From: Lepidodermella squamata
Lineage: Eukaryota; Animalia; Gastrotricha
DNA: 64,000 nucleotides
Reading direction: 5' to 3'
Assembly (NCBI GenBank): GCA_047495785.1
Contig: JBLDXI010000001.1
Coordinates: forward strand, 1,116,001-1,180,000
The stretch's first letter is position 1; every line of letters begins with the position of its first letter. Positions 20,613 through 46,722 of the stretch are shown here, piece by piece. Position numbers and translations under genes: made by a program. The notes under the pieces were generated by a model. That model was not told the origin of the DNA. It searched no databases and saw only the letters and a program-made list of their open reading frames with translations.

Positions 20613-20825
20613 TATTGCTTTTTGAACTCGCCAAGCCACAGAAGACTCGGGAAGTTTGTGTGGCAAGTTGTCCCACGTCTGTATTTTTCTCAGTTTATTA
20701 CAGTATTTATCTGTATTTATCACTAATGATTTAAAATGACTAATGACTAAAAGCGAAAAGCACCGTCTGTGGGTAATGGGTTAGATTTTCCGACATGATT
20801 CTCCTGTTTTTGTTGCTTCCGATTT

Positions 20826-20920
20826 TAGCATTTCTGATGCATAAATGCAAGAAACGAGAACGTGTCATTCGCCTTCAGTCGAATGTAGTTCGGCGAGTTG
20901 TAGTTGTGGGCGATCGCTAA
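20826..20920 (-). pseudogene. Duplicated 3' tip of LC8-like gene A (part of the 20335..20920 copy of 26989..27348)
   Basis: Near-identical to 27254..27348, including the stop codon and 3' flank. Confidence 0.85.
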
Positions 20921-27253: not shown

Positions 27254-29419
27254 TTAGCATTTCTGATGCATAAATGCAAGAACCGAGAACGTGTCATTCG
27301 CCTTCAGTCGAATGTAGTTCGGCGAGTTGTAGTTGTGGGCGATCGCTAGGATGTCACCAGCCGCCACAGTCCAGTAGCCGCCATACTTGTTCTCATACTC
27401 ACCTCGCATGTACTGGCAGATACCGCCGGCATCCTGACCACGCCCGATAGCACCCGTCGCCCAGTTTAGCGTGTCCTGGGTTTTCCCACCTCCAAATCCG
27501 CTGTCACTATCAGACATAAGGGTGAACATGCCATAAGAAACGACTCGCGCATTCGTTGTCACTGCCTTGATCGACTTGACCTATAAAAATATCAAAAATT
27601 AAAATAGGTCATAACAAGAAAGTAATAAAATGCCTGTGTGCATAATTGCTGGTAAATTTGAAGGAACGTGTTCGAGGTCGCCCCAGCCGCCATTAGAACA
27701 ACCATGTTATTATCCTGCAAGGGATAGCGAGCCGACCACGATTTGCCGGCGCCGCAAAACCACCGCCCGCCATACCGTTGTTCCATCTGGCTTCTGATGT
27801 AATTACACCTGTCATACGTTGAATTCAACATTTGAATCGACCGCTGGGCGTGTTGGAGGCACAGATTTTTCACTTCATCCCTCGCTTTCGTGGCTGAATG
27901 AATCGTGAAAGAAATGCTGGTACGAGTCGCGGGAGAAGGAGCAGGAGCAGGAGCAGGAGCTGGAGCCGGAGCAGTCGGCATCGGCTGGTATTGGGGTGGG
28001 TTTGGATTATTCACTGGAGGAACGTATGCCTTGGAGTCAAACTGAGTTGTCGCAACCGTGGTCGCACTAGTGGTTACACGAGGCATATCAGGGATACGCC
28101 GGATAACATTGCAGTCCGGCAGGACAATTACAGCGTTATCGTTCCCTTTTCGCAAGAATATCAGGTTATTGCTGGCGGGGGCGAAAGACCCGGACAAATC
28201 GCTGTCACCGACTGCTACAATCCAATTACCACTGTACTTCTCCTCCATTTGATCCTTGATGTACTTGGCCATTCCTTTTCGTGTTGACTCGAATTGAGAA
28301 GCGAGTAGGAAAAAAGCGACAGCGTCTTGTTTTACTGACAGTTCCATCCCAGGGTCAGTTTTATCAGCCAAAATTTGCACATCACCCTAAAAAATATTTT
28401 CTATTTTTTCTGACATTTTCCCCGATTTTTCATACCGTTTGCAGCTCATTCACTGGAATGGGCGGTGGAGGTTTGAATTCGCTGCAAGCTGGGCGGAAAA
28501 TCTGAATCAGCGCCGGGTTGGTCGATCGGCGTTTCATAGCGATAAAATCAGCATCGGCATATTTGACCGATGTCGTGTGATTGCCACTGGTCGGTGAAAT
28601 AACCACAGCCCAGCTGTAAGGTCCGTACTTGGTGTTAAACTGCGTTCGGATGTAGTCGGAAATCGCTCGATCCGCGTTAGGTTTTTGCCCGTTGAAGGCA
28701 TAAGCTAACGTTGCGATATTCACTGCATCTTGGCGAACAGCTGGCGACATGCTAGGATCACTGTTGGTCAAGATTTCGAAATCACCCTGAAAAATGGTAA
28801 AATAAAATTTAAAAATTATAATAAAATTAATTAGTTGAAAAAGCGATTAAAGAAAGCGTTTAAGATTTTAAGATTTCTTATAAATACTCGAATTTCTGCA
28901 TTGCTTCTAGGTGGTGCTTCAGGTGACTGCGGTGCCGAGTCACCGCCGATATTGTCCCAATTTCCAGACGCTGTTGTAGTAGTCGATGTGGTCTCAGTTG
29001 TTGAATCGGTGATCGGACTCCCGGTCGAGTCAGATCCCGTGGTGGAAGTAGTGTCATCATTCGACGTATCGACTTTAGCCTGTAAATTGCGAATAACCAA
29101 AATTTAGATTTACCATTATTAAAGGCTTGTTTGTGTTAGTTGAGCTTGAAGCAGCCTCGTCTTCAGCCGCAGCCTGCGTGATTTTAGCCACACGATGACT
29201 AGCGGGTACTTCGAAGTCTGAGAAGCCGGAATCATGCTTAGCAGATGGTGTAGGTTCAGTTATAAAGCTTTTAGGCGTTATTGTAACTGTAGCAGGTATT
29301 TTAAGCGTTGTAGGCGGGCTTTGGCCTTCATCACTCGATCGCTTGCATGCACTTACTGATCGGACCGATTCCGAAACCAACAGGAATAGCAGTGTTACCG
29401 AAGTAACTCTAAACAACAT
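27254..29419 (-). CDS. Secreted protein A with four tandem dynein-light-chain (LC8)-like domains; 5 exons
   Basis: Signal peptide, S/T-rich region, then 4 repeats such as MELSVKQDAV...MAKYIKDQMEEKYSGNWIVAVG, resembling LC8 MQQDSV...[22 protein letters not shown]. Confidence 0.8.
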
Positions 29420-29493
29420 TATTCAATGATTAGCCCTAGAAAACAATATTATGACTTAATTCGAGAATTTTCATGTGCCAAAAAGGTAGCCGA

Positions 29494-29565
29494 AGGCCCA
29501 GGCGGGAATTGAACCCGCGATCTTCTGTTTACGAGACAGACGCTCTACCACTAAGCTACTGAGCC
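29494..29565 (-). tRNA. tRNA-Thr(CGT)
   Basis: Reverse complement of the same 72-mer; T5 terminator ~10 nt downstream. Confidence 0.93.
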
Positions 29566-30279
29566 TGAGATGACGATTCGATTTGTTAAAAATTCAGGTT
29601 TTACGATGATTGAGCCTTGAGCGCAAGTTTTTTCCAGAAATTTCATTATTAAAAAGATACATAGGAGTTCGGTAAGGAGAGAGGACTCAATGCGGCAACC
29701 GAAGTCACTGCTTGTAAATTTGTCTAAAATTGTTTGCACAAGTCTGTACGGGCACACCTTGAGTTTGATGTCAAACGAAAGCTGAAGAGACAGAGAATTT
29801 CACGCGATTAATCACATGTTTTTAGCGTTCAAAGTTGAAAAGTTAATTACCTGCGAATCTAGAGCCGAGTATAAAAAAACTATTCAAAATGTCCCCGCAT
29901 TGCGGTAGAGCAATCTAGTAACTCTAGTATAGTAACCAAAAGATTTTGGGTACTCAAACGCAATAGGGATTAAAGCAAACAAACACATCTGGTAAGGTTT
30001 ATATAATATCATTTCGTAATTCCAGAGCATCCTATGACATAGATGGTGCGTGCTATCGCATTACCGCGAGGCCAGTTATATGTATCACATCGGAATGTTT
30101 AATTTGCAATTCATTAGTTACCGCAGCAGAATGAACCCTAGTTTACATAGCACATTTCTGTCATTGGCTTCATTCTGTAATAAATTTATTCGTATCAATT
30201 TCCAACAAGAGTCATAAAATCAAGATAATAAAAATTACTGGGTCATTGTATAACTCCTTTCAATTTTTTCGCAGCTGAT

Positions 30280-32063
30280 TTACTTGCAGGAAGTTGGGTG
30301 CATGAAGGCAACGACTGCAAACGTATCATTCTTTAGAATCTGGATAAAATTCGGCACTGCGTATTCCGTCACCGTCACTCCTGTATCACCGGCTAAAACT
30401 GACCAAGCGCCGCCGTACTTGTTAACCAGCTGTGTCTGGACGTAACTAGTCAAAGAGCCGATTTTATCATTTCGCCCGAGTGATCCCGTCGCATAATCGA
30501 TCACGTCCTGCTTCTTGTACGATTCAACCCCGTAATTGTCATTAGGAACAGGCTTGAAGATGCCGTAATTCACCGCGCCAAGTCGCCCTGTTACACGCTT
30601 GATGTTGGCCGAACAAAACATGTTGTAAATCTGAATATCAGTCGATCGGCCAGGTGTCGGTCCGTTAACTTGCAGGGCGATGCTTGTATCCTGGTAGGGG
30701 AAAGACGCGGCCCAGGGTAATCCATTCGACCCGCTCCACACGCAGGTCCACTTGCCGCCGTAGACTTGTGTAAATTGCAACTTGATATAACTGCACCTGG
30801 TAGCGGCTGTCTTGCCGCCTAGCGTTATCGATTGTTCAGCTTGCTTCTTCGCGAAATCTCGCATCGAAAGTTGACTGAATTTCGAAGAGATTTTAACTGA
30901 AATGTCGTAGCTTTCACCCCGCGTTGTCGTAGTAATAGATCTAGTCGAAGTCGTTGTTGCTTTTGTTGTTGTTGCTGTTGTTGGTGTTGTTGGTGGTGAA
31001 GTCAGAAAAGCCGAACATTTCGCATTTTCAGGCATCAACTGGGCCATATGAACATCTCCTCGTCTAAGGTACAACAAATTTCCGCCCCTGGTTGAGTAGG
31101 AGCCGCTGAAAGGCCCGTTGCTGACAAGTGTCACCCAAGAACCTCCGAATCTCGTCGTCGTGCTGATATTCATAAATCTCGCAAGACCAGCCTTACTTTG
31201 GTCAGGATTCAGGGCATTGTTAGTCGCTAGAATGAAATAATTGACAATCTCCTGCCGAACAGTTGGATTTATGTTGCCATCAGATTTAGCCTTAACCAAC
31301 TCGATATCTCCCTGCAATTTAATTTAAATTTTTTAAGGAGGATTTTTCTTTTAAATTTCTTACCAAATTGAGATTTGCTGTAGTCGGAGCTGGCGCAGTG
31401 GCTGAGGTGCAGCTACCTCGAAATACCAGAACATAGGTAAGGGGTTCTTTCCTCCTTACAACGACGAATTCCGAAGGGTCAGATCGGTTGAAAAGCGCTG
31501 TAATTGTTTCATTCCCGCAGCCTACGGCAACATTCCACCACAAGCCGTACTTGACTGTCATGAAAGCTCTCGCCTGATCAGCAACAGCCTGGCACCAGTT
31601 ATCTTTTGAGCCAAGCATTGCGAAAGCAGTTTTCACGAACATGACAACTTCTTCCTTGAATTTAACCGGCGCTTCAGCACTGCTTTCCTCGGTATATCCG
31701 TAATCAGGCTACAATATGGTTAAAATAAATAAAATTATCGAATTTTTCAGGAATACAATGGCTTACCCAGGATTGTTCAGGGGTTGTAACATTTTTCGAT
31801 TCCTGTTAATTGATAAGATTATTTTTTTTATTTACCGATAAAATTCCTTACAGTCGAATTGCTGGCAATGGTATTGTTGACGTCTGGCGCTCCAATGAAT
31901 ATATGCACACCACTATTAGGAGCCATCGTAGTAACGGCAGGCTGTCAAAAATAATCAAGGTATGATCCAAGAAAATGGAGATACTTACCGAATTTTGCGC
32001 AGAACATATCCCGCTGATCAACGTTATCGCGAGTGCGATAAAACCTATTTTCCAGGCAGCCAT
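30280..32063 (-). CDS. Secreted protein B with four LC8-like domains; multi-exon
   Basis: Signal peptide MAAWKIGFIALAITLISGICSA; cores VKYGLWWNVAVG, TRFGGSWVTLVS, QVYGGKWTCVW, NKYGGAWSVLAG; ends NDTFAVVAFMHPTSCK. Confidence 0.8.
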
Positions 32064-33382
32064 TTCTGAGCTTTTTGTTTCAATTTTTAATCACAAAATT
32101 TTCAAACTGAGGTAGGCAGCTCTGTACGGAACAAGGCTACACGCCTCTGCACGGCAATAAAAAATGGCGAATTCCACAGATACTTTAAATTTAAAGGACA
32201 GCTATAATTTGATGATAAAAGCTTAAGATATTTGAGCCAGCTACATTTCTTTCAAGTTGGCAGTAAACACCTTATTAAGTCGTTTAAGTCTAAAGCGTTA
32301 TTCGAAGGATTTGTACTGCATGCTTTTTATATTCACGAGTAGGCTAATTTTTCATAGTTTTTCAACGTGAAATTCTTGTTCAGAGATTATCATAAAAAAT
32401 AGTAGGTCACCAATGAATGCGCTTTTTTATGTTTTAATCTCTGCCCTATAGTCAAAATGGTAACAAAATGGTAAGGTAGCAGCCCCCTCCTCGTGATAAG
32501 GTCTACGATCTACTTCAGGTATAATTCATCTTCGACTAAGTGAAGTCGAACTAGTCAAAGCCATCTACCTGGTTCATAATGGTAAATGTTAGCAACTTAA
32601 TAGGTAAATCCTATACCAAAAAGTCGTAGACTTCTAGTCATATACCAGAAGAATACCTGTAGTCGTTTCTACTGCCATTCATTTCTGACTTTATTAAGGC
32701 AGGCATTATAAGGAATGAAAATCTTAACAAAAGACTTTGAATTCGTGTAAGACCACACGGGTATAATAAGAGGATTCAAGAGGATATAAGTACATGTTCG
32801 AGTAAATAACAGTATATAGGAAATATTGGGAATATAAGTGCCCATGCACACAAAGACTAAAGACGAGAGGGCATGCTACTTTTTCGGTCTTCTTGCCATC
32901 GCGATGAACATCTGATTGTCGCGAAGTGGGCGTCCTACACATGGCAGCCAAGGCTCGGAAAGCCATTGGAACAATTCAGAAAGCCAAACATAATCTGTGG
33001 TTAAAGAAACACGAAATTAATCGAACGTTAAACGGTAAAGCGTAATGCTTACCGATTTGTAAGAGAGTAAGCGATGGCCGACGGCCAAGGTTCGAGCCCT
33101 CCGCCCCTCAAAATTTGACAGCCCAAACCGATTCTTTTGCTTCGCCCAACCTGTAAATTTCAAATTGGGGAAGTAAGCATCAAGTCTCCGCTTACCTGAG
33201 CGAGCATCGTATATTCGAGGCCATTCAAATAGTCTCATGCGAGACACAAAACCAACGGAGCTTGAAATCGTTGAGCATTCACCGAGTTTCTAGCTGAAGT
33301 ACCGTTTACTCCAGTTTGAAGAGATTGCTATGTTGGAGGGCGTTGAAAATTGAAAATCGAGAAAAATAACCAATCGAAAGTT

Positions 33383-35186
33383 TTATTTGCAAGAAGTCGG
33401 ATGCATGAATGCTACAACAGAAAAAGTGTCATTCTTCGTCATGCTGATGAAGTTGGGCGTGACGTAAGCTGCCGGCCTAACCGCGCTCAAATCACCCGCA
33501 AATATCGCCCACATACCGCCGTACTTGTTCTGCATCAGCGTTTGGACAAAATTAGTCAACGTCCCAACTCGATCATTGCGAGCAAGTGACCTTGCCACAT
33601 AATCTACGAGGTCCTGCTTCTTGAAAGATTCTGCCGATGTATTTTCCCCCGTCTGCTTGAACTGGCCCCAGTTGACCGCAGAAGGAACGGCCGTGATTCG
33701 TTTTATCGAATCAGCATCCGAGCAAAACATGTTGTAGATCTGCAAGTCGGACGAATCCGAGTTGTTTTTCACATCCATCGCTAGATTGGTGTCAGAGTAG
33801 TTGTAAGACCCAGCCCAAGCTTCGCCGTTCACTCCGCCCCAGGCACACACCCATTTTCCATCGTAAGTCTTCTGAAATTGCGAGCGAATGTAATCGCAAC
33901 GAGACTCGAATGACCTGCTACCAGATTTCAAAGATTCTGCAGCAACCTTAACCGCGAAGTCTTTCATCGAAGCCTGGCCTAACTTCGAGGAACCTTTAGT
34001 GCTGAAAACATAATCGATTGAGCTGGATACAGTAGTTGGACTTGAATTAGCCGTTGTTGATAGTTCTAATTTCATGGTCGTCGAGTTGTTATTAGGACCC
34101 ATAGTAGTAGTGAAGCCTGATTTTGTAGTCACCGGCCGCTGGCTTGTCGTAGTCGGATCTTGCTTAGCAAGGACGCAATAGTTCCAATCTTCGGGCAGGA
34201 ATTGCGCGAGATGAACACTGCCTCGCTTCAGATAGATGAGGTTGTTACCTCTCGTCGATAACGCCCCACTAAATGGGCCCTTGCTTACAACGGTCGCCCA
34301 GGATCCGCCGATTTTCGTCGAGATGCTCCTATTCATCGCCTCAGCAATGTCAGCCAGGCTTGCTGATTCGTTGGTAGCCTCAATGAACGAATTCACGATC
34401 ACTTGCTGAACTGTCGGATTCATTTTGGCATCAGATTTCACCTTATCAAACACGACGTCCCCCTTAATAAAAAAAATTAGATGAAAATTCTAAAGTTTTA
34501 TGTTAAAATACCAATTTCAGCGGAGTAGCAGGCTGTGCTTGTGGTATTTTGTAAGTTGCACAGTTAGCTCTGAAGAATACGAGGTATTTCCGAGGTTCCT
34601 TTTGCCTAACAACGTAGTGATCCGTTTTCGATCGGTTGAAAACAACCGTTATCGCATCATCTTCACACCCGGCTACAACGTTCCAGAACATTCCATACTT
34701 GGCAATGATGAGTATCCTAGCCATTTCTGCGGTAACCTGACACCCATCGGCTCTTTTAGAACCCGCGACGAATCCAGACATTGCGGACGTCATAACGTCC
34801 AATTTGAAATTCTCAGTAGCATCAGGAGCGTGATAGATAAGTTCATAGTTATCTAGCTGTTATGAATAAAATTTAGCATGAATTTATTTAAAATTATTGA
34901 CTTCCTATACCGCATTCGATGGTGTCGCCAATTTTCCTCGATTTGTTGTTGTTGATGACGAGGGCTGCGTAGTTTTTACAGTCGGCTGTGCCGTTGTCAC
35001 TTGAGTTTTATTGCGCCCTTCGTCCTTTTTATTATCGTCGTCGCTCTTTGAAAGTCATAATAATGTTAGGCAATAATTATATGAGAATGAAGGTGACCTC
35101 TCACCAACTTTTTTATCGGCAATGCTGGATTGAAATATCAACAGGCTGATAATAGCAGTGAATCCAAATCTCAAACAGTAATTCAT
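33383..35186 (-). CDS. Secreted protein C with four LC8-like domains; multi-exon
   Basis: Signal peptide MNYCLRFGFTAIISLLIFQSSIA; cores AKYGMFWNVVAG, KIGGSWATVVS, KTYDGKWVCAW, NKYGGMWAIFAG; close paralogue of B. Confidence 0.8.
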
Positions 35187-35365
35187 CGTGAGGGCCCTTG
35201 AAAAAATTTAAATAAAAGCTTTTCGTTTGTTTGGCATGAAATATGTAGCTATTTTTTGTAACCCTCCGTGTTCAACTGGATTGAACTGTCAAAGAAATGA
35301 AGATACGCCCACTTAACCATGATGAAAAACAAGAGATGGCCCGGTAGTTACGCTTTTATTTCATG

Positions 35366-37536
35366 TTAAAGAATGCCATTTTGAGCGAGAATTTTCGCGT
35401 TATCAGAACACCTGTCTTCAACGAAAACCAACGGCAGAAATAACCCCATAGGAACGAGTGAAACCAGGGCTAAACTGCTGGCGAACGCTAAAAAGTCGAC
35501 TTTAAACGCGATATCGCGCCACAATCTGTTATTTTCAATTCGCTTCGTGTGAATCCTCAAGCGAGTTGCCTCCAATTTAGCTTCGTAGTACTCTTGCGAT
35601 AGAAATTCATCGGACCCAGAATCCTCGGATGATTCATCGAAAGACGGTGTTACTCGATCTTCATCATCTGTTGAATCGCTTGAGGGTATTGGCGATCGTA
35701 AAGGTTGGGAAACAGCCGATTGCGAACGCCCTCGATTGCTACGTGATTCCATCGACAAAATCTTCTGGCGCATAGATTCGGCTTGTTGCTCACTTTCGTG
35801 AAGAAAAACCTGAATAATTAAAATTGAAAAAATACGTGATTTGCGGAGTACAAATAATACCCTGTCCAGGTCATCCGAAGATCCGTGATCTTCAGTATGC
35901 AAGGCTGGGACGTATCTAAAGAATGTGACGAGAATTTCTGGAGGAGGTACCGACCAAACAGCCATCATTCGCTCGACAAATACCGACTCCATTATACCGA
36001 AAGAAGAAATCAATATTAGGCCCATGATATACTGGGCTAAAGCCGTTACTGCATCATTAGTTTTAGGCTGGAAATTATTGAAAAATAGCAATTTTTCGAA
36101 TTTTTTTATGAACTTATTCCTACCAATTCTGCGGTTGAAATTGTTTGAAATACCACCAAGCTGAGCATGTTGGTGATGCCGAAGCCAACTCTATCGCCAC
36201 TTGTTCCGAAGAGATTTATCGCGAAAACAAACAATGAAACTATCGACAAAATTATGCACTGAAATTTACGATTTTTAGTTAATTTATAACGGATTTAAAT
36301 TTAAATTTACTGGGAAAATTAAGTTGATGACGTAGAACGTTGTCTTTCGCTTCACTATCATCGAGTACTCGATTCTCGTGAATGTTTCTCCCAGCGTTTT
36401 GTACGTATGATTGTAAATCTGAAAAAAATTCTGAATTTTGAATAAATTAAATATATTTGCTCACGGTGGTTCGAAGTTGGCACAGAAAGAATTGATTTGA
36501 ACCGAAGCGGCTGTCAAGCTGAAATTTAACCAATTTTATTAAACCTATAAGATAAGCAGACTATTTACTACTTACCCCCATTGAGCTCTTACGGCTGAAA
36601 ATTAGCTGCTGATTGTTCAAGCTCCAGCTTAAAATCAAATGGAAAGGGTCAAAATCTCAAGTTTTCCTTGAAATTCCGCAACTCCAACCTTTCGAACTCG
36701 AAGGTGCACTAAAAAATTAATGATTTATTTATTGCAATATAAATTCGTTGGCAGTTACTTACCACTTGAAAGTCGAACGGAAAGGTTATGAGGTGGAGTT
36801 CTGGTTTGAGTAATCAAAGACTAATTTTCATAATAATTCATGAAAAATTCAGCAAAAATTTACCGCACCACGTACGAGCCGAGCCCGTGGGAACGTATTT
36901 CACCCATCCGCGATAGGAAACGCGAGCTAAGAAGCCGGAATCTCGAGTGATGGCATAATGATGATCAGCTGAGTTGGTCATCTGAATGACAACAATTTAG
37001 TGGCAATTAATGGCGAAATTATATCACTTTCATACCGCTATATCAGGAAGCCATATTTGGCTCGGATCGAAGGTTAAATGAGTCAAGCCGCCGTAGTCAC
37101 GTGGAGCCCTGCAGAAAGGATTGCCAGAGTGCTCTGTGAGAAGAGAAGACCTTACCATTGAATTCTACGATCCCTCCATTCGATGAACAAGGCTATAACT
37201 GATTCGAAGATGCCCTCCCTTTCATTCTTAATCAGAAAGTTTGAATTGTTTTTCAATTGAATTTGCAAATCGGAAAAGCTTACTGCAGCTTTGATTTTCA
37301 ATAGCAAAATATGCAATTTTATGACAACAGGCCTGAAATTTGGAGATAATAGCGAGGAATTAAGTGGGAAATGAAACCAACTTCGCTGGAACAGCCTGTT
37401 TTCTGTAGTCAGCAAGGATATCGCCGAATGGCTTCGGACCTTGTGCAGTTAGGCTAACCGTTACATTTGTAACAGTGTGATTGCCCTCATGGCACCAAGC
37501 CAAATTAACGCCAGCTAAAAATATTAGCAAGATCAT
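35366..37536 (-). CDS. Cys-loop ligand-gated ion channel subunit 1 (nAChR/5-HT3-like, non-alpha); many tiny introns
   Basis: Spliced: EWRDRRIQW, IWLPDIA, Cys-loop CELHLITFPFDFQVC, ESWS, KRKTTFYVINLIFPC, M2 GDRVGFGITNMLSLVVF, LPKT, M4 WRDIAFKVD. Confidence 0.9.
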
Positions 37537-37658
37537 TATTATCAAATTTTTATAATAAGAATTTATATTAATACGCCATTGACGAATTTTTGTCCAGAAA
37601 AGCTGAGTAAACTTTGAGAAAGCCATGTTTATTGACAGCACCACATAAACAATAGGCA

Positions 37659-39896
37659 TTAAAACCTTGCCTCATTGCCACCCTTCGTCAACATGCTCTC
37701 AGCGTTATCCGAGCATTCATCATAGACTAGAACAAGAGGAAGAAACAACGCTAGGGGTACTAGGATAGAGGCAGATAGGCTAGTCACAAAACACAACATG
37801 TCAATTTTATAGGCGACTTGATGCCACAGCCGGTTGTTGTGCGCGCTTTCGGCCTGTTTGCGCATTCGCAGGACTTTCAACGATTCAAGGAGAACCTTAC
37901 GGGCTGTGTCGTCAGTATCACTGTCTAGCACGATGTTGACAGAAGGCGAGAAAACTTCGCTTGAACCGACTGAGGGTGTTAGAGATGCGCCAGTATTCAC
38001 GTTTGTTAGGCCTACGCCAGATTTTGACAGGATTAAATTCCGCTTTCGAAACGCTTCCATGCGGCTTGCGAGGGAGCTTTTCGAATAATTAGCGTCACTT
38101 TTTCGAATCTCAGCTTCAGCTCTTCGAACGACTTTAATCTCATTCATCAGTTTTTCCTGTTGAGATAAAATTAAAAAAATTGAAGCACAACACAAAGTCT
38201 AACCCTATCCTCGATATTTTGCAGCTTCTCAAGATGAAACGGTGGAATTTCTCGGAATATACGAAGAATAAACTTAGGCGGCGGGGATTTGCTGTTATCC
38301 ATGAGCCGCTCGACAAAAATTGTTTCGACAATACTGAAAGCTGAAAGTAGCACAAGAGATACGATGTATTTTGACAGCGAAGTGACTGCGTCGCTTGTTT
38401 TCGGCATTTCGGCTGTTGCGATGGTTTGAAACACGACCAAGGTTAGCATGCTGGTCGTGCTGAAGATTATTCGATCGGCTGTTGACTCGATGGGCGAGAT
38501 TGCGAATGCGAGTAGGGAAATAACAGACAAAATGGCGCACTGAAAAATTGAGAAAAAGTCTTCGAATTGTTAACAAACTCTTTTCCGAACTTACAGGGAA
38601 AATTAGGTTAACCACGTAATACATCGCTTTTCTCTTGACAATGACAATAAATTCGATCCGGGCGAAAGCTTCTCCAGTATGGACGTAGGTGTGATTATAT
38701 ATCTTTTAATAGGAATATTTCAAGAAAGTTGGAAAAATCAAACAGGATTCACCTTGGTTTTCAGTTCACACAGAAAAAACTGACGCGATCCGAAATTAGA
38801 ATCGAGCTTTGACATGAAATAGTTCTTGATTTAGGAGTAGATATTTTCGCGCTACCTACCGATATTTGACTCCTGTCATCAAAACTGAGCGCGTCACTTT
38901 CGAGAGACCAGCTCTCAAAATCATAAGTGCACTAAAACAAAAATTTGGACCATGAAACTTGAAATGTTGAAATATCGGAACTAACCGTTTGGAAATCGAA
39001 CGGAAATGTCAGCAAATTGAATTCTTAAAATGAAATTTTCGCATTAAAATTCAATAATCATGGAAGCAGCGACTTACCACACCAAGTCCGGGCAGTTCCT
39101 ATTATAAAATTGGATTACTGGCTTTGAAGAGCATCAGTTATTAATTCATACCTGTTGGGACAAAGTTGATCCATCCTTCATGAGAGACTCGAGCCAGGAA
39201 GCGGCTATCCCTCGAAATTGAATAGTAGTGATCCGCAGAGTTGGTCATCTAAGTACATTTTTAAGTCCTCGCTATGTGGTTATATTGAATAAATTACCGC
39301 AATATCTGGCAACCAAACCTGATGTGAGAAAATTTTATAAAATGTAATAACTGAAACGAAAGCCCTTACTTGATCGGAATCGAAAGCTAAATAAGTCATG
39401 TTATTGTTGTCAATTGGGTTCCTTGAAAATATTATTTGAAGTGACGCGCATTTTTTACTCGCATGATCATTACCAGGTCATCCTTTTATCGCGCCATTCG
39501 ACAAAAAGCGCGATTACCGACTCGAAAATGCCATCCTTTTCTGACTATAGAAATCGACACATATTGAAATAAAAGCGTGAATGAAAAATTTTACTAACCG
39601 CGGATTTTAGCTTCATTAGCAGTACATGGAACAGTACTTTGACCGGCCTAATGAATGGAATTTTTCTAAATTTATTGACGGATCTTTTGAAAAGCTTGCC
39701 TTTCAGGAATTGCCTCCTTGTTATAGCCACTGAAATGGCCGCCGTCGCTCCAGGGTTTGCCGGCTACCGGTACATCTTGCGATCCCGTCGATACGAATGC
39801 AGTAGGCGGTCCGCTGTCTGGTACCAATGTGCCGAAAGCATTGGGAATAAAGCAGACGAATGGCCAGCAAACGAATGACCAACGGATAATTTTCAT
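37659..39896 (-). CDS. Cys-loop ligand-gated ion channel subunit 2
   Basis: VWLPDIA, CEFNLLTFPFDFQTC, ESWS, KRKAMYYVVNLIFPC, ADRIIFSTTSMLTLVVF, MPKTSDAV, WHQVAYKID. Confidence 0.9.
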
Positions 39897-40254
39897 AATA
39901 TTAGTTGCGAATGTTCAATTTTCATGTGAGGCTATTTCTATCTTTAATAGTGAATTAAAAATTATTCAATTGGCTGAGCTATTACTGTTGGCCAGCTGAG
40001 CAAACTGAGAGCTTCACGTGGAGTAGTTTTGTTGTTTGAAAACAATAAAAGCTGATATTTACGCTCTAACATGAATGAATATTCGACTTCTACACATTTT
40101 TTCAATGATTCCCCTGGTTCAAAATTCTATATTATGAAAATGATCGGGTTTATTACTTTTATTCAGGCACAAAATCATTGAATACTAACGATAAAGGTGT
40201 TCTCAGTTCGTAAATTTGATATTGGAAATTTCAAGGATAGGAAGTTGAGATAGC

Positions 40255-42860
40255 TTAGGAAAACGACGTTCCATGCGGCGCAACATGGGCGAGCAAATAC
40301 CGAGCATCGTCCGAGCAGTCGTCTTGAACGAGAAGAAGCGGCAAAAACAAAGCCATCGGCACCAGTAGAGCAAGTGCCGTGCACGTCAAAAATGAAATTG
40401 TATCCACCTTATACGCAACAGTGCGCCACATTCGATTGTTTTTCACGCGTCTAGCGTGACGCCGAGATCGGAGAGTTTGAATAGCCTGAGCGTCGATAGC
40501 GTCCTGATTCGCATCAGCACTGTTATCAGCCGCCCATGATCCGCTGTTCATCACCGCGCCAAGAATGTCCCTTGATACATTCGACGACGAGCTAGACGAT
40601 GAGGATGACGATAACGACCCGATTGAAGACATTGGATGAGGCCCGCAGCAATCAGTTGGCTCGAGGCTGTTGATATCATCGCTGGGGGACTTGCTCGGCA
40701 GTTGGATATGCCGCGAGATTTCACCTGATGGAGAGGGCGTTACGGCACTCGCCACGCTGCCCGCCAGGCTATGGTTCAATGCCGCCAGTTGTTCACCGGA
40801 CACGTAATTGAACCGCGTTTGGCCAGTTGAACTTTGAGAATTACTGAGCCTTTGCCGTCGCTTTATTCGCCGATTCATATTTTTCCTAATCTGAAAAAAA
40901 TAAAAAATAAAAACTCCAGCTTAAAAAATTAATATTTTACTTTATCAAGCTCGTCGTCGGTATCGTCTTCATTCGGCTTCTTTTTATCGCTGTGGAATTC
41001 AGGCACGCCCTCGAGCATTCTCAGCAGAAGTTTCGGCGGCGGTTTCGAACATCTCTCCATGAAGCGTTCGACTACAACGGATTCAGTTATTCCAACGGCT
41101 GAGATTAAAATCAGAGCGATAATGTATTTTGATAGTGCCGTAACAGCATTGCTTGTTTTAGGCTGAAACATGAAATTTGATAATATTTTGAATTTTCGGA
41201 AAATTTTCCCACCATTTCAGCCGTCACAATAGTTTGAAATACAACCAAAGTAAGCATGTTTGTGGTCCCGAAGCCGATCCTATCCCCTGTAGTTTCGACC
41301 GATGGTATAACGAAAACCAGTAATGAGATAAGCGACAGCGTTGTGCACTGAAAAATCGAGAAGTCTTGATACATTTCGAGGAAAGCTAATATCGAGCAAT
41401 ACCGGGAAAATCAAGTTGACGATATAAAAAGTTGACTTTCGCTTGACGATGATCGAAAATTCAACTCGAGTAAATGTCTCTCCAGTGAAAGAGTAAGTGT
41501 GGTTGTACGTCTGCCGATGAAGCATGAAAAAAACTCGACATAGTTCGATGAATGAAAAAAATCGCGTCATACCGTTGTTTTAAGTTGGCAAAGCCAAAAT
41601 TGGCATGATCCGAAATTTGAGTCTATCTGCAGAAGGAGTTGGGAAAATTTCGGAGGTATTTGTTTCATGAATCTTTGTTTTACCATCAAGGCGCTTTCTC
41701 CATTGAATGTCATCGTTGAACTATCTAATGACCAGCTAATAAAGTCAAATTTTCCAATCTCGCCGATAAATGGAGAATATTTCTTACCTTTCAAATTCAA
41801 GCGTGCACTTGGTATCAGTTTCAAATTATAAGCTTTCATTATTTTTTTTGTAATGAAATAAATCATACCATTTGAAAATCGAAAGGAAAAGTCAGAAGAT
41901 TGAGGTCTATTGTAAATTGATATTTTTACGAATTTCCTCGAATTTTGCGAAGTAACTTACCACACCAGGTTCGAGCCGTGCCTAAAATTTAAGCCAACAG
42001 TTCACAATTTTCTAATTAAATCGTGTTACTTACCCGTTGGCACGTATTTTAGATGTCCTGTATGAGTAATTCGAACGATGAATCGCGAATCTCGAGATAT
42101 AGAATAATGATGATCAGCCGAGTTGGTCATCTAAGGTAGAAAATATATAATTAATCGAACAACACGCTCGAGCAGATTATACAGCAATATCCGGAACCCA
42201 CACCTGCAAAATTGGTAGATTAAAATTCTGAAAAATTACTGTCATAAGCTTTTACTTGATCTGAATCGAAAGCGAGTAGCGTCAAATTGTCGTAGTCCAT
42301 GGGATCCCTACGGCGAAAATGCAAGAAATTGCCAAATGGAGAGACTTTAGCTTACCAAACCATCCTTTTATCGCGCCATTCGATAAATAAGGCAACAACG
42401 GATTCGAAAATGCCTTCTTTCTCGATCTGTAAGAAAGAAAGTATCGATAGGCATCGATTTTCACAGTGAATCTTACCGTTGATTTGACTTTGATAAGCAA
42501 AACGTGAAGGCTAACAACCAGTGGCCTGCAAAATTGAGAATCATTTTTATAATTTCCAGAGTTTGAATGTAAGAATAACTTTTCAGGCATCGCTTCCTTG
42601 TTGTAGTTATTGAGTATTTTCGACAAAAGACGTTGGTCTGAGCTGACATCATCGCCATCAGCCAAGTTCATGTTGGAGTTGGAGTTGCCGTCATTGTTAC
42701 TACTACTTTGGAATCCACCACCCGAGCTACTACCACCCCCGCCACTTGTCGGCGCCGACTTCGGCGGCAATTTCGGCGGTCTATTCTTAACTGCTGCTTG
42801 ACAAAACGAACAGCATACAGTTAAGCATAAAACTATGAGGATTCCGAAAGTTTGAACCAT
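40255..42860 (-). CDS. Cys-loop ligand-gated ion channel subunit 3
   Basis: Signal peptide, DQRLLSKILNNY, VWVPDIA, CDLNLLTFPFDFQMC, KRKSTFYIVNLIFPC, GDRIGFGTTNMLTLVVF, WRTVAYKVD. Confidence 0.9.
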
Positions 42861-43735
42861 CTAAATGAAACAAAAAAAAACAAGAAATTTCTGGAGGAAT
42901 CAGGTTAATGTTACTTCTTGATATAGCTTTCTAGGGCATTTTTATATTGCGTAGCACAGATTACAATTTTTTCAACACATATATTGGCATTATCAAGGCG
43001 ATCGGCGGTGAAATAAATGCTGAATGGAAGTATATAATAGAGTGAGGGTGCGAAAGATCATTATTTAGGTTTATTTGTATAACATCTCACTGCAGCTCAG
43101 TCCGAAGAATAAACACACGCTCGCATCTTCAACGGCATAAATCAACGCAAGAATTGCCTGAAATTACAATGACTTGAAATGCAAGTAATTCGCGCATAAT
43201 AAAAGTTGAAGCAGCGAATTACACCGAATGCAATTATCGAAATCATCGATGCGGAACAGGAAGGCCTTTCTAGCAATTATTCATTTCCAATTACTAATTT
43301 AAAGGACATGCTCAATATTTCACCGAAAAATCAGGTTAAACCGAAATAGCATGAAATCTATAAATTTCTATCAATTTATTAAGAAGGCATTTATTAGAAT
43401 CACACGATTGATTAAAATGTTCTTTTTGCCAGTTGAGTTGCTTCTGAATTCATTTTTCAGCGAAAAAATCAGCTGTTGATATTTACCTCATACCTGCTAG
43501 ATAATCCTCACATCGTTGTTTGGATTATGCGGATTTTCCGCCTTCATCGCTCGCTGGAAAAATAACCATAGGCGCCGGTTTCGGAAGATAATAAACTTGT
43601 TCCCACTTTTTTCATGTTCTACCGAAAGTTCTTTATTGATAAAATCCTGAGAAAAACTCTTCGAGGACAAATAAAATAATGCATCTAATATTCACGAACG
43701 CTAGCATTTCCTGTGTAAACACGAGTGCTGCCCGT

Positions 43736-45244
43736 CTAATCTTGGCATTTCGGGTTCATGTAAGCCGCCAGTGAAAATCCGCCACTCTTCCTTTGAATAT
43801 GCAAAAAGTAGGGCGCCACGTAGCTAGCAGTCGCGTCCATCAGCGATTCGCCGACAATTACAGTCCACACGCCGCCGTAGGTCAATTGCAGCTGCGACCG
43901 CACGTAATTTCCAATAGTGCCGAAAGTGACGACTGGCAATTTAGACGCAACAAAAATGCCATACATGACCTCGCTAATAGTTGTATCGTTAATATCATCA
44001 TCAGTGCTGTTTAAAACCATGTAATCATTCTGCAAAAAGACGAAAAAAATAATTAAAAAACCTGAGGATAGATTAAAATTACCGTGACATTCGAAGCTTT
44101 AATTCGATCTTTTGAGATCGTAAGTTGGCCACCGTAAATCGTTTGAGCAAGTTGGGAAACTGTAAATGTAGAAAAATAATAATTGTTGATGCTCAACTGA
44201 CCAATTTTTTGCTTACTAAATGATGGAATGCAGGTTTCTTGGAAAATGTGGATGACCATGGTGCGATTCGGCACGACACTTGGGTCATTTACCAGTTTAT
44301 CCCTCGACGTGTGGTAATCGTCGACCTGGAGCAGCATCACCGTTCCATCTATCGCGTCAGTTTGGGCAATTGCGTCTTTCCCAGCAACTGCTACAGCCCA
44401 GGGAAATTTCGAATATTTCTTATCCAAATTCCTGATTTGAAAATTAATTAAAAAATTGCAATGAATGTAATATTTTTGCTTACGCTTTTATGTAGCCAAT
44501 ACGATCAGAGGTAGACCCTGACGCTGGCGCGAGAGTTGCCAATTTAACGGCATAGGCGACCATTTCCCATCGATTCGGCGAAATATCCCCCATTTTCACG
44601 GTTACAATTGTTGTAATTTCCTGTTGGGAGACTGATGACACCTCAGCGGCTACGAGTGATCGGATAGTAGCGACCGTTGGCGCATTTATTTGAGGAGCGG
44701 GTTTAGCTGTGGTTTGAGCCATAACAGTCGTAGTCACGCTTGGTTGAGCACTTGTTGCGGGTCTTGTCGCGGTTGTGACGTTAACCGCTTGGGCCATTGT
44801 TGTTCCCATTGCCATTGCTGTTGTCATAGCCATTGTTGCGGCGGCTTTAGTCGTAGCTTCCGCCACAATCGATCGATTATTGCCAGTGGCTGACCAGTTT
44901 CCAGTTGAGGCGGCCCAAGTTACATTAGTCATGCCAGGGGTGGTCCAGCTAACATTATTCGCCATCTGGGTCACGTTTGACCAGGTTCCCGCCGGCGCAA
45001 CCGTCGATGAATTCATCCACATTCTAGCCCAAGTTGCATTTGCGGTTGTGATTTCCGGTTTAATTGTGGTCACGCTTGACTGGTTAAAAGCCGTGATGGT
45101 TACATTTACTACCAATAACGGTGCAACAGTCGTGACTGTTAAATTAGTAGCAGCGGTGGCGTTCGCAACTTGAGTCACATTTTCCGCTGCTCGAGAGAAT
45201 CCAGCTGCGATGATAACCAGAGTAACAGTCAATAAGCTCTTCAT
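43736..45244 (-). CDS. Secreted protein D: mucin-like Thr-rich stalk plus two LC8-like domains; 3 exons
   Basis: Signal peptide; many NxT sites; RIGYIKA|NLDKKYSKFPWAVAVAG and IGNYVRSQLQLTYGGVWTVIVG; ends LAAYMNPKCQD. Confidence 0.8.
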
Positions 45245-45626
45245 TACGTTCAAGTCCCCTTGAAAAGTAAATAACTAAATTTAGACGTGAAGAAAAACAG
45301 TTTTAAGTTGTTGTTTCCTATTAGAGGTTTCTTTTTATTGCGCATTGATAAAAGGCATTATTTAGTGATGATATTTGTTTATCATTTTTATTACCGTTCT
45401 CAAAGCACCTACCTACTCATTTTAACGCAGTTTGGGTTCAAATTCCAACCACGCAAGCACGGTGTGTTTGGTACTCGAGTATATGGCACCACCGCGGCGT
45501 CTTTTTATTCTCATATATTACGTCAAATTTTTTATTTCAAAAAAATGAAAACATATTATAAAGATGATGATTCACTCGATCGAGAAATTTCTTCGTAAGG
45601 TGATGAACTCACGATGACCTCGTTTC

Positions 45627-46722
45627 TCACATTTTACACTTTGGCTGCATGTATGCGATGAGTGTGAAGCCGTCGGCGCCTGTTTTTTGCAGCTGGAGAA
45701 AGTAAGGTGCCACGTAATCGGCGACAGACTCAAATACATCACCTATGGCAATCGTCCAAATGCCGCTGTGTATCATCGACAGTCTCGACTGAACTGCGGC
45801 GGCGATAGCGCCTTTCTCCTTTCGATAATAAGGAAGGTTCAGTTGAAAGGATTTTATAGTCGCCATCACATCTTCAGCTACCGACTCGTTCAAATTTTTA
45901 TCAGTCCCTTCCATGATTCGATAACCATCCTAAAAAATTAGGATTTTATTTCGCGATTTGTTCTACGAAAAAAATTACCGTGACGTTATCCATAATTGAC
46001 TTGGGATAGCTTGGAATGTTAAATTTTGGTATTCCGGAGAAAACTTGAGACAAAAAAGATGGAAAATTAGATGGAAAAGAACGAAACTATCATACGAAAT
46101 GAAGGCAGGCAAAACTGTTGAAAAATGTGAACAAGCAGCGTTCGATTCGGGGAGATCGACGGATCTCTCTGGAGATCGGGCGGCGTTAAATAGTAATCGT
46201 CGACTTGCAGCAGCATTGAATTGCCCTCAGCAGCGTCAAATTTAGCCGCCATGTCCCTACCAGCCGCTGTTACAGCCCATTTGCTATAAGTGAATCTAAT
46301 GTCCATTTTTCTGTTAAATTTGATATTAATATTTTAACACGATTTGTTTCCGGAATTTACGCTTTAATATAAGCTATCCGTTCAGCAATACTGCCGAGTG
46401 GGGGCGTTAGAGATGCCACTTTGATCGCATAAGCTATTACATCGTGGCCTTTCGTGGTCGATTGTTCAGTTCGAAGGCTAACCAGTACCAGAATGATGTT
46501 TGGTTTGTAGTCGTAAAGCGCTCTTTGATTCACTGTTGTCGTTGTTTGTGGCCGATTTGTCGTAGTAATTGTAACTTGATTGGTGCCATTGTTATTAGCA
46601 GTTGAATTCACAGAAATTTGGGCACTAGCAGGACCAGGGTCCATCAATGTAATAGAAAATTCTGCAGAATTCGCCGTCTGTATTGTTACAACCAACAGCA
46701 AGGCAATGAAAATACCAACCAT
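45627..46722 (-). CDS. Secreted protein E with two LC8-like domains; multi-exon
   Basis: Signal peptide; RIAYIKA|KMDIRFTYSKWAVTAAG and IAAAVQSRLSMIHSGIWTIAIG; ends IAYMQPKCKM; paralogue of D. Confidence 0.78.

What the first reader, a model, noticed from the sequence alone, without database searches (positions are those of the whole stretch)
27254..46722. LC8-like domain count is always even (4,4,4,2,2): single-chain pseudo-dimers
Seen: A, B and C have four repeats and D and E have two. In A-C a P/T-rich linker separates domains 1-2 from 3-4, while the links within each pair are short. Known: LC8 works as a dimer with peptide grooves at the dimer interface. Inference: each pair is a covalently fused asymmetric dimer giving two non-identical binding grooves, possibly locked by the Cys that ends nearly every repeat (FRPAC, LPDC, QQLC, HQKC).
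Basis: inference. Interest (0 to 1): 0.75.

Follow-up and report, generated by a model that had tools for sequence, protein, structure and literature searches.

The report
Secreted proteins built from LC8-like pairs
A small invertebrate carries five neighbouring genes for exported, mucin-like proteins whose folded parts are two or four copies of LC8, a module that normally works inside cells as a dimer. The copies probably pair up within one chain, but this is predicted, not shown, and the even number is not a rule for the wider family.

Summary
Five minus-strand genes (A-E) each encode a signal peptide, a Thr/Ser/Pro-rich stretch and 4, 4, 4, 2 and 2 LC8-like domains. All 16 domains end in a Cys. 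Links within pairs are 12-30 residues; links between pairs are 35-65 residues and T/S/P-rich. RNA contigs confirm three introns of gene A.

The pseudo-dimer reading is partly supported.
- For: AlphaFold2 docks B d3-d4 (pLDDT 90.8, pTM 0.87), and each domain matches dimer-state LC8 (Z 10, rmsd 1.3 Å).
- For: the d3-type/d4-type pair recurs as the whole folded part of D, E, a paralog on contig C29 and the only close public relative.
- For: Cys counts are usually odd per domain but even in every adjacent pair in this window and in the C29 paralog.
- For, weakly: ESMFold2 pairs A d1 with A d2 (0.60 against 0.00 for controls).
- Against: a control chain, A d2-linker-d3, which the reading treats as non-partners, also docks (pTM 0.73). 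Prediction therefore does not identify the partner.
- Not tested: no coordinates were available, so superposition on LC8 and S-S distances are unmeasured.
- The canonical LC8 peptide-groove residues are not conserved.

"Always even" fails outside these genes. I found at least eight secreted single-domain LC8-like loci in this genome, and the scan had noted others. Distant tandem LC8 proteins with three domains exist.

The parts
27254..29419 (-). Gene A: signal peptide, T/S-rich region, four LC8-like domains. Exons: 29357-29419 (or long form 29114-29419), 28888-29079, 28436-28786, 27634-28386, 27254-27580.
   Evidence: RNA contigs give joints 27581-27633, 28387-28435, 28787-28887, plus alternative joints 29080-29356 and 28787-29113.
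28484..28786 (-). A d1, LC8-like, one Cys (terminal)
   Evidence: Pfam 25.7 bits; alignment A1; scores best against the d2-type profile.
28111..28386 (-). A d2, LC8-like, one Cys (terminal)
27916..28110 (-). A inter-pair linker, 65 residues, Pro/Thr/Ala-rich
   Evidence: AF2 pLDDT 39-59 over this stretch.
27640..27915 (-). A d3 (d3-type), four Cys
27257..27550 (-). A d4 (d4-type), two Cys
30280..32062 (-). Gene B: signal peptide exon near 32062, small exons, d1 exon 31364-31708, then one exon 30280-31311 holding d2, linker, d3 and d4
   Evidence: Low-depth RNA contigs cover parts of it. These introns are inferred from splice signals and were not confirmed.
31409..31669 (-). B d1 (d1-type), three Cys
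   Evidence: No Pfam hit alone; recognised through the domain alignment and profile.
31015..31311 (-). B d2, one Cys
30283..30909 (-). B d3-d4 unit (d3 30613-30909, d4 30283-30582); this is the chain that was modelled
   Evidence: AF2 pLDDT 90.8, pTM 0.87; LC8 matches.
33383..35185 (-). Gene C: signal peptide exon near 35185, T-rich exon, d1 34560-34811, then one exon with d2 34175-34462, d3 33722-34018 and d4 33386-33685
   Evidence: Pfam 53.9 bits.
43736..45244 (-). Gene D: signal peptide, about 190 residues rich in Thr/Ala and N-x-S/T sequons, d1 split by an intron (44483-44617 and 44230-44430), d2 43745-44029
   Evidence: d2 scores 53 bits on the d4-type profile. The d1 pieces score best, but weakly, on the d3-type profile. 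Introns are inferred from splice signals.
45627..46722 (-). Gene E: signal peptide, T-rich region, d1 split (46360-46503 and 46109-46309), d2 45636-45929

Best explanation
A-E are a lineage-restricted family of secreted, probably O- and N-glycosylated, mucin-like proteins. Their only folded parts are LC8-fold domains arranged in heterotypic pairs. The unit is an N-terminal domain of one type joined by a short tether to a C-terminal domain of another type (d1+d2, d3+d4). Within a unit the two domains most likely associate in the way the two chains of an LC8 dimer do: beta3 of each completes the sheet of the other. This gives a single-chain pseudo-dimer. The invariant Cys just past the last strand of each domain, near the pseudo-twofold axis, probably forms the inter-domain disulfide that replaces the reversible LC8 dimer equilibrium outside the cell. 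Four-domain proteins are two such knobs on a glycosylated stalk.

Shown: the genes, their splicing (gene A), LC8 homology, domain counts, Cys pattern, and the recurrence of the d3/d4 module.

Predicted: that the domains dock.

Inferred: the partner choice, the LC8-type geometry, the disulfide, and any ligand binding. The ligand is unknown and is not expected to be a canonical TQT motif.
For: - Homology: Pfam PF01221 above cut-off; profile against PDB LC8, E 3e-10.
- Export: all five genes have signal peptides, and every protein ends right after the last domain.
- Docking: AF2 of B d3-d4 gives pLDDT 90.8 and pTM 0.87, with beta3 formed in both domains and linker pLDDT 78-93. LC8 beta3 is reported to be unstructured unless paired with beta2 of the partner (PMC12017986).
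- Dimer-state fold: residues 1-98 align to LC8 residues 4-89 at Z 10, rmsd 1.3 A in dimeric crystal structures. Solution structures of monomeric LC8 give Z 7.0-7.9, rmsd 2.1-2.3 A.
- Weak, repeated matches to PP2C beta-sandwiches span both domains (Z 2.5-3.2). A tandem Tctex-1 Atlas model aligns over 180 residues (TM 0.59).
- Module conservation: D d2, E d2 and the C-terminal domain of the C29 paralog score 44-53 bits on the d4-type profile and at most 20 bits on the others. The N-terminal domain of the C29 paralog, and more weakly D and E d1, fit the d3-type profile. The only close public relative, P0001, is signal peptide + T-rich region + d3-type + d4-type.
- B and C are 39-58% identical position by position, but only 10-19% identical between different positions.
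- Cys counts per adjacent pair: A 1+1 and 4+2; B and C 3+1 and 3+1; D and E 1+1; C29 3+1. All sums are even. In gene A the alternative pairings give odd sums: d2+d3 = 5 and d1+d4 = 3.
- The terminal Cys is present in every domain of the tandem members of this clade: the 16 window domains, both domains of C17, C29 and P0001, and the distant P0040. Among the single-domain paralogs examined, only two (on C2) have it, and both have a second Cys N-terminal to the domain.
- The d1-d2 tethers keep their length (16, 15 and about 16 residues) while their sequence varies. The d3-d4 tether is conserved between A, B and C.
- ESMFold2 on A d1 + A d2 as separate chains gave a median ipSAE of 0.60 against a best control of 0.00, verdict 'weak support'. 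Partner pLDDT was at least 75 and the runs agreed in at least 36% of contacts. The mark was reached by 51 of 78 solved complexes and 2 of 108 mismatched pairs. A score of 0.60 or under was seen in only 5 of those 78 solved complexes and in all 4 mismatches that passed, out of 180.
Against: - The AF2 control on A d2-linker-d3, a pair the model says are not partners, also docked: pLDDT 84.4 and pTM 0.73, although 65 of the 249 residues are disordered. For undocked domains I estimate about 0.4. AF2 therefore joins any two of these domains, and both runs used alignments containing distant two-domain proteins.
- The complex score may come from memory of solved LC8 dimers.
- No coordinates, PAE or contacts were available. 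LC8-type geometry and Cys-Cys distance are inferred, not measured.
- The even count is not general. I found at least eight single-domain secreted paralogous loci in this genome. In the top 150 public hits the domain counts were 1:80, 2:53, 3:10, 4:6 and 6:1, with apparently complete three-domain proteins such as P0033, P0015 and P0091.
- The C17 paralog has 1+2 Cys and P0001 has 3+2, plus N-terminal Cys whose fate after signal cleavage is unclear.
- A symmetric interchain disulfide in a homodimer would explain the invariant terminal Cys equally well.
Confidence: 0.45

Rival explanations
1. Chains pair side by side. Each domain forms a symmetric LC8-type homodimer with the same domain of a second chain (d1:d1', d2:d2' and so on), and the terminal Cys forms a symmetric interchain disulfide on the twofold axis. 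The even domain count would then be an accident of duplication history.
For: - LC8 is a homodimer, and a residue near the axis meets its own twin.
- 13 of the 16 window domains have an odd Cys count, as this model requires.
- Secreted single-domain paralogs exist and would have to dimerise in this way if they dimerise at all.
- AF2 docking is not partner-specific.
Against: - A d3 (4 Cys) and A d4 (2 Cys) would each be left with a free thiol.
- The single-domain paralogs mostly lack the terminal Cys.
- This model does not explain why d3-type and d4-type always travel together in that order, nor why the d3-d4 tether is conserved and modelled as ordered.
Confidence: 0.2
2. The domains are independent beads on a glycosylated string. 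The lone terminal Cys serve to cross-link the proteins covalently into a polymer or to other matrix or cuticle components, as in gel-forming mucins.
For: - Mucin-like T/S/P linkers, many N-x-S/T sequons in D, and secretion signals.
- Many domains have a single unpaired Cys.
- The LC8 ligand-groove residues are lost.
Against: - LC8 beta3 needs a partner strand to fold.
- AF2 and ESMFold2 both predict domain-domain docking, with controls at 0.00.
- Even Cys sums per adjacent pair would be coincidental.
Confidence: 0.2
3. In the four-domain proteins the chain folds back as a hairpin, so that d2 pairs with d3 across the long linker and d1 pairs with d4.
For: AF2 docks A d2 with A d3 with confidence (pTM 0.73). 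In B and C the Cys sums for d2+d3 and d1+d4 are also even.
Against: - In gene A these pairings give odd Cys sums, 5 and 3.
- The two-domain members (D, E, the C29 paralog, P0001) consist of d3-type plus d4-type alone, so d3:d4 is self-sufficient.
- The inter-pair linker varies from 35 to 65 residues and is probably heavily glycosylated.
Confidence: 0.05

Closest known systems
LC8 / DYNLL dynein light chain (Pfam PF01221), a homodimeric hub protein
   Same: Homologous sequence and the same predicted fold (Z 10, rmsd 1.3 A over 85 residues). The core Trp (W54) is invariant. The domains are predicted to associate with one another.
   Different: - Secreted, with a signal peptide, and set in mucin-like chains.
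- Two or four diverged domains in one chain rather than one 89-residue protein.
- An invariant C-terminal Cys.
- The TQT-peptide groove residues (E35, K36, F62, Y65, T67, H68, Y75, Y77) are not kept.
- The genome has an ordinary LC8 gene elsewhere (contig C13).
DYNLT1:DYNLT2B (Tctex-type) heterodimer, PDB 8rgi, and tandem Tctex-1 proteins in the ESM Atlas
   Same: A precedent for two different light-chain-fold subunits forming one dimer. An Atlas tandem Tctex-1 model aligns across both domains of the B d3-d4 model (180 residues, TM 0.59).
   Different: Tctex is a separate, cytoplasmic family. 8rgi is made of two chains, not one. The structural match to these domains is weak (Z 3.8).
Trematode tegument proteins with a DLC-like domain (FhCaBP2/4, CsTAL3; PDB 5fx0, 9voa, 5x2d)
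   Same: An LC8-like domain used outside the dynein context in an invertebrate surface tissue. Structural matches at Z 6.7-8.5.
   Different: Those proteins have one DLC-like domain fused to EF-hands. Here Pfam finds no EF-hand, each gene has a signal peptide, and the domains come in tandem.
Nematode Ground-like domain (PF04155; GRL hedgehog-related proteins)
   Same: An extracellular, Cys-bearing domain that these data indicate is an LC8 homologue. The profile of the 14 domains hits a protein with five Ground-like repeats at E 8.9e-11. Pfam Dynein_light scores that protein 45.6 bits. hhalign gives probability 90.6%, E 1.3e-6.
   Different: The window domains lack the Ground-like Cys-Cys ... 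Cys-Lys pattern. They score only 19.7 bits against a cut-off of 35.4. PF04155 found nothing in this genome, although its control search found nothing anywhere either.
Uncharacterised tandem LC8 proteins in public data, e.g. the mite protein KAI1280722.1 (Halotydeus destructor)
   Same: Signal peptide plus two LC8 domains (P0022, P0013, P0023, P0026, P0047, P0050, P0058). P0040 has exactly two Cys, one at each domain end.
   Different: Only 12-20% identical to B d3-d4. They are much closer to canonical LC8 (Pfam 82-105 bits) and have no four-domain members. I found no paper that describes them.

Membership tests
Dynein_light / LC8 superfamily (PF01221) | Sequence match to the family model above its curated cut-off | tested here: met
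   56.5, 42.8 and 53.9 bits for the A, B and C multi-domain exons against a cut-off of 29.1. Single-domain exons score 13.7-25.7 bits or nothing. The domain profile hits PDB LC8 at 3e-10.
Dynein_light / LC8 superfamily (PF01221) | LC8 fold: two helices followed by a five-stranded sheet | tested here: met
   The AF2 model (pLDDT 90.8) aligns with LC8 chains at Z 9.6-10.1, rmsd 1.3 A, over 85 of 86 residues. Both sides of the claim rest on a prediction for the window protein.
Dynein_light / LC8 superfamily (PF01221) | Dimer formed by beta3 pairing with beta2 of the partner | tested here: inconclusive
   Docking is predicted (pTM 0.87; ipSAE 0.60 against 0.00, weak support). No coordinates were returned, and a supposedly non-cognate pair docks too (pTM 0.73).
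Canonical LC8 hub (DYNLL) | Conserved groove residues that bind TQT-type linear motifs | tested here: not met
   The positions equivalent to E35, K36, F62, Y65, T67, H68, Y75 and Y77 vary in all 16 domains.
Canonical LC8 hub (DYNLL) | Cytoplasmic single-domain protein of about 90 residues without a signal peptide | tested here: not met
   All five genes start with a signal-peptide-like segment and carry 2 or 4 domains. The signal peptides were judged by eye, not by a predictor.
Ground-like domain (PF04155) | Match above the curated cut-off, plus the conserved Cys-Cys ... Cys-Lys pattern | tested here: not met
   The best score is 19.7 bits (E 0.0013) against a cut-off of 35.4, in the gene C exon only. 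The Cys-Cys motif seen in the P0016 repeats is absent from alignment A1.
Trematode tegument-allergen-like / CaBP (EF-hand + DLC) | N-terminal EF-hand pair fused to one DLC-like domain | tested here: not met
   No EF-hand family appears among the Pfam hits at E up to 1.
Mucin-like secreted glycoprotein | Signal peptide and Thr/Ser/Pro-rich low-complexity stretches | tested here: met
   The linkers are 45-69% T/S/P. T-rich N-terminal regions and many N-x-S/T sequons are present in D. Glycosylation itself cannot be tested here.

The most novel reading that the evidence does not exclude
An undescribed extracellular branch of the LC8 superfamily. Here the reversible LC8 homodimer has been turned into a covalent, single-chain, disulfide-stapled heterotypic pseudo-dimer that serves as the folded knob of mucin-like proteins. 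The nematode Ground-like domain of hedgehog-related proteins would be another offshoot of the same move of LC8 to the outside of the cell.
Probability: 0.35. Interest if true: 0.7.

Novelty: new variant of a known kind. Interest (0 to 1): 0.55.

Why it matters
LC8 is a textbook intracellular dimerisation hub. A secreted, glycosylated, Cys-terminated version arranged in fixed pairs would be an example of a homodimer becoming a fused heterodimer, and of a cytoplasmic fold being re-used in the extracellular space. It would also give a structural handle on the Ground-like domain of nematode hedgehog-related proteins; I found no description of that domain's fold in the open literature searched. The family seems very restricted: one close relative turned up in a search of representatives of about 15 billion public proteins. 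Its biological role in this animal is open; surface coat, mucus, cuticle or adhesive are possibilities. The practical lesson is that structure predictors dock any two LC8-like domains, so pairing claims for such arrays need controls or experiments.

Tried and rejected
- The word-based protein search with the B exon found nothing. The exhaustive profile search was needed.
- Foldseek and VIA-align against the PDB, including the wide search, found no solved single chain that covers both domains. The geometry could therefore not be checked against a precedent.
- I looked for a way to read inter-domain contacts or Cys distances from the models. No tool returns coordinates, PAE or contacts, and complex prediction withheld contacts because support was weak.
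- Ground-like membership was rejected.
- A nematode origin is unsupported but not excluded. PF04155 found nothing in this genome, and its control search rang nowhere, so that negative is weak.
- Organism identification failed. The neighbouring sulfotransferase has a best public hit of only 41% identity, to a nemertean. Run names were coded.
- Literature searches for secreted or tandem LC8 proteins, and for Ground-like together with LC8, found nothing relevant.
Spliced gene models (A d3-d4, D and E d1, and all d1-d2 pairs) were searched and modelled exon by exon, by reference only. No full-length four-domain chain and no single-chain d1-d2 unit was folded.

Full report
**What is there**

The window is eukaryotic. 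Introns are about 50 nt, and the genome is 121 Mb in 151 contigs. Between 27254 and 46722 five genes lie on the minus strand. A, B and C are adjacent (27254-35185). D and E are adjacent (43736-46722). Three Cys-loop receptor genes lie between the two groups.

Each gene opens with a hydrophobic signal-peptide-like segment, followed by a Thr/Ser/Pro-rich stretch. In D this stretch is about 190 residues and full of N-x-S/T sequons. After that come only LC8-like domains, and each protein ends 0-2 residues after the last domain's Cys.

Pfam Dynein_light scores the multi-domain exons 56.5, 42.8 and 53.9 bits against a cut-off of 29.1. Isolated domains score below the cut-off or not at all. A profile of 14 domains (A1) finds solved LC8 chains at E 3e-10. 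The counts are 4, 4, 4, 2, 2. The first domains of D and E are split by an intron.

Contigs of two runs carry spliced forms. They confirm gene A's introns at 27581-27633 (GC-AG), 28387-28435 and 28787-28887. They also show two alternative 5' splice forms. Introns in B-E are inferred from splice signals only.

- Within-pair tethers are 16, 15 and about 16 residues for d1-d2 of A, B and C.
- They are 12 and 14 residues for d3-d4 of B and C, and about 30 residues in D.
- Inter-pair linkers are 65, 35 and 52 residues with 45-69% Thr/Ser/Pro.
- Only two columns of the domain alignment are invariant: the Trp equivalent to LC8 W54 and the C-terminal Cys. The two split domains also end in Cys.

**Domain types**

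B and C are 39-58% identical position by position, and A d4 is 33-40% identical to B and C d4. Different positions within one protein share only 10-29%. The four-domain architecture is therefore old, and each position has its own type.

Type-specific profiles place D d2, E d2 and the C-terminal domain of a paralog on contig C29 with d4 (44-53 bits, against at most 20 for other types). The C29 N-terminal domain fits d3 (25 bits against at most 8). The pieces of D and E d1 fit d3 weakly.

The only close relative among 1.84 billion representative proteins is P0001, from metagenome contigs (E 3.8e-33). It is signal peptide + T-rich stretch + d3-type + d4-type. The d3-type/d4-type pair is thus a conserved, self-sufficient module. 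A-C carry an extra N-terminal pair.

**Cysteines**

| Pair | Cys per domain | Sum |
|---|---|---|
| A d1, d2 | 1, 1 | 2 |
| A d3, d4 | 4, 2 | 6 |
| B and C d1, d2 | 3, 1 | 4 |
| B and C d3, d4 | 3, 1 | 4 |
| D and E d1, d2 | 1, 1 | 2 |
| C29 paralog | 3, 1 | 4 |

Most domains have an odd count, yet every adjacent pair above has an even sum. In gene A the alternative pairings d2+d3 and d1+d4 would give 5 and 3.

The tandem members of this clade all keep the terminal Cys. Most single-domain secreted paralogs lack it; two on contig C2 have it together with a second Cys N-terminal to the domain. A distant two-domain protein, P0040, has exactly two Cys, one at each domain end.

Exceptions or uncertainties: the C17 paralog has 1+2, and P0001 has 3+2 plus N-terminal Cys near the signal cleavage site.

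**Structure prediction**

AF2 on the B d3-d4 unit (209 residues, 34-row alignment A2) gave pLDDT 90.8 and pTM 0.87. The beta3 strands formed in both domains, and the tether pLDDT was 78-93. A review states that LC8 beta3 is unstructured in the monomer and is stabilised by beta2 of the partner, and that Ser88 lies close to the dimer interface (PMC12017986).

VIA-align maps model residues 1-98 onto LC8 residues 4-89 at Z 10, rmsd 1.3 A, for dimeric crystal structures. Solution structures of monomeric LC8 give Z 7.0-7.9, rmsd 2.1-2.3 A. The crystal-versus-NMR difference is a confounder here. The second domain maps at 116-205. On this mapping the terminal Cys sit at LC8-equivalent positions of about 90 and 92, just past Ser88 and Gly89.

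No solved single chain covers both domains. Weak, repeated PP2C beta-sandwich matches across residues 59-176 (Z 2.5-3.2) are compatible with an alpha/beta-beta/alpha sandwich like the LC8 dimer. So is an Atlas tandem Tctex-1 model aligned over 180 residues (TM 0.59). Neither proves it.

**The control**

I folded gene A's d2-linker-d3 exon (249 residues, alignment A5) in the same way. On the hypothesis these two domains belong to different pairs. The result was pLDDT 84.4 and pTM 0.73, with the linker at pLDDT 39-59. Sixty-five residues are disordered, and by my arithmetic undocked domains would give about 0.4. AF2 therefore docks this pair with confidence too. AF2 tells us that these domains are dimerisation-competent LC8 modules. 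It does not tell us which domain is the partner of which.

ESMFold2, used without alignments, folded A d1 and A d2 as separate chains. The scores were 0.61, 0.60 and 0.27, median 0.60, against a best control of 0.00. The verdict was weak support, with partner pLDDT at least 75 and at least 36% of contacts shared between runs. The mark was reached by 51 of 78 solved complexes and 2 of 108 mismatched pairs. A score of 0.60 or under was seen in only 5 of those 78 solved complexes and in all 4 mismatches that passed, out of 180. The pass may also reflect memory of solved LC8 dimers.

**Is the count always even?**

In this genome every multi-domain member I found is even: A-E, C17 and C29. The genome also encodes secreted single-domain LC8-like proteins:
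- a near-identical pair of loci on C42 and C85;
- three adjacent genes on C2;
- one each on C66, C34 and C38;
- a single domain on C3, whose upstream exons I did not resolve.

Earlier scan notes mention further fusions, with a WAP-like module and with cathepsin L, which I did not check.

Among the 150 best public hits my domain count was 1:80, 2:53, 3:10, 4:6 and 6:1. Some three-domain entries are fragments. Others look complete: P0033, P0015 and P0091, the last with a signal-like N-terminus. Evenness is a property of this clade's multi-domain members. It is not a rule of tandem LC8 arrays. Because A-C are orthologous in architecture, and D and E are recent duplicates, the number of independent observations is small.

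**Function**

The residues that form LC8's TQT-peptide groove are not conserved in any domain. 'Two non-identical binding grooves' therefore remains a hypothesis without support, and any ligand would differ from LC8 clients.

My best reading, at about 45%, is that each pair is a single-chain, probably disulfide-stapled LC8-type pseudo-dimer that forms a compact knob on a glycosylated stalk. The rivals are:
- side-by-side homodimers with symmetric interchain disulfides (about 20%);
- independent beads whose lone Cys cross-link the proteins into a matrix (about 20%);
- a d2:d3 / d1:d4 hairpin (about 5%).

**Comparison with what is known**

These are members of the LC8 superfamily by sequence and predicted fold. 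They are not canonical LC8 hubs: the location, the groove and the architecture all fail that test.

The nearest analogues are trematode DLC-like tegument proteins, the Tctex-type heterodimer, and uncharacterised signal-peptide-bearing two-domain LC8 proteins in other animals, for example a mite. A further analogue is the nematode Ground-like domain, which these data indicate is itself an LC8 homologue. I found no paper on tandem or secreted LC8 arrays, or on a link between Ground-like and LC8. That is absence from the searchable library only.

**Limits**

No full-length chain and no single-chain d1-d2 unit was folded. Signal peptides were judged by eye. Expression was checked for A, and weakly for B, but not for C-E. 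The organism could not be named; the neighbouring sulfotransferase is at most 41% identical to any public protein.

Noticed in passing
P0016 (public protein); window 33386-34453: The nematode Ground-like domain (PF04155) appears to be an LC8 homologue. The LC8-like profile A1 hits a protein with five Ground-like repeats at E 8.9e-11. Pfam Dynein_light scores that protein 45.6 bits, above its cut-off. hhalign of A1 against the five repeats gives probability 90.6%, E 1.3e-6. No open-access paper holds both terms.
   Followed up: partly
window 20798-20920 (-): A pseudogene fragment copies the last 31 codons, the stop and the start of the 3' UTR of gene A. It lies about 6.4 kb downstream of gene A, with no upstream exons in frame.
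   Followed up: partly
window 27581-27633 and 28787-29356 (-): Gene A has a GC-AG intron between its d3 and d4 exons. It has two alternative 5' splice forms: the signal-peptide exon joined to the T/S-rich exon, or a long first exon joined directly to the d1 exon, which skips the T/S-rich exon.
   Followed up: partly
window 29488-29821: A high-copy element lies between genes A and B. Summed contig depth in the DNA-like run X1 is about 33,000 here against 50-100 nearby, and many loose ends occur at its borders.
   Followed up: no
window 35366-42860 (-): Three Cys-loop ligand-gated channel-like genes lie between the A-C and D-E groups of LC8-like genes. The scan has a separate note on them.
   Followed up: no
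G000 contigs C2:2609850-2610898, C42:1605879-1606151, C85:163572-163844, C66:686304-686465, C34:1183520-1183672, C38:392811-393056: Secreted single-domain LC8-like genes occur elsewhere in the genome. Three adjacent ones on C2 each have their own stop codon, and two of them have their own signal peptide. Most lack the terminal Cys.
   Followed up: partly
L015 (G000:C17:1924180-1927455): A two-domain LC8-like paralog lies next to exons that encode a Thr-rich stretch and sushi/CCP-like Cys-rich modules on the same strand. It may be a larger mosaic gene.
   Followed up: no
window 46910-47857 (-): A single-exon cytosolic-type sulfotransferase gene whose best public match is only 41% identical (a nemertean). 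The animal therefore has no close sequenced relative in the collection.
   Followed up: partly
P0022, P0013, P0023, P0026, P0047, P0050, P0058, P0040 (public proteins): Other animals and metagenome eukaryotes encode a signal peptide plus two LC8 domains, for example Halotydeus destructor KAI1280722.1. Several have a Cys at domain ends. They are annotated only as hypothetical proteins.
   Followed up: partly
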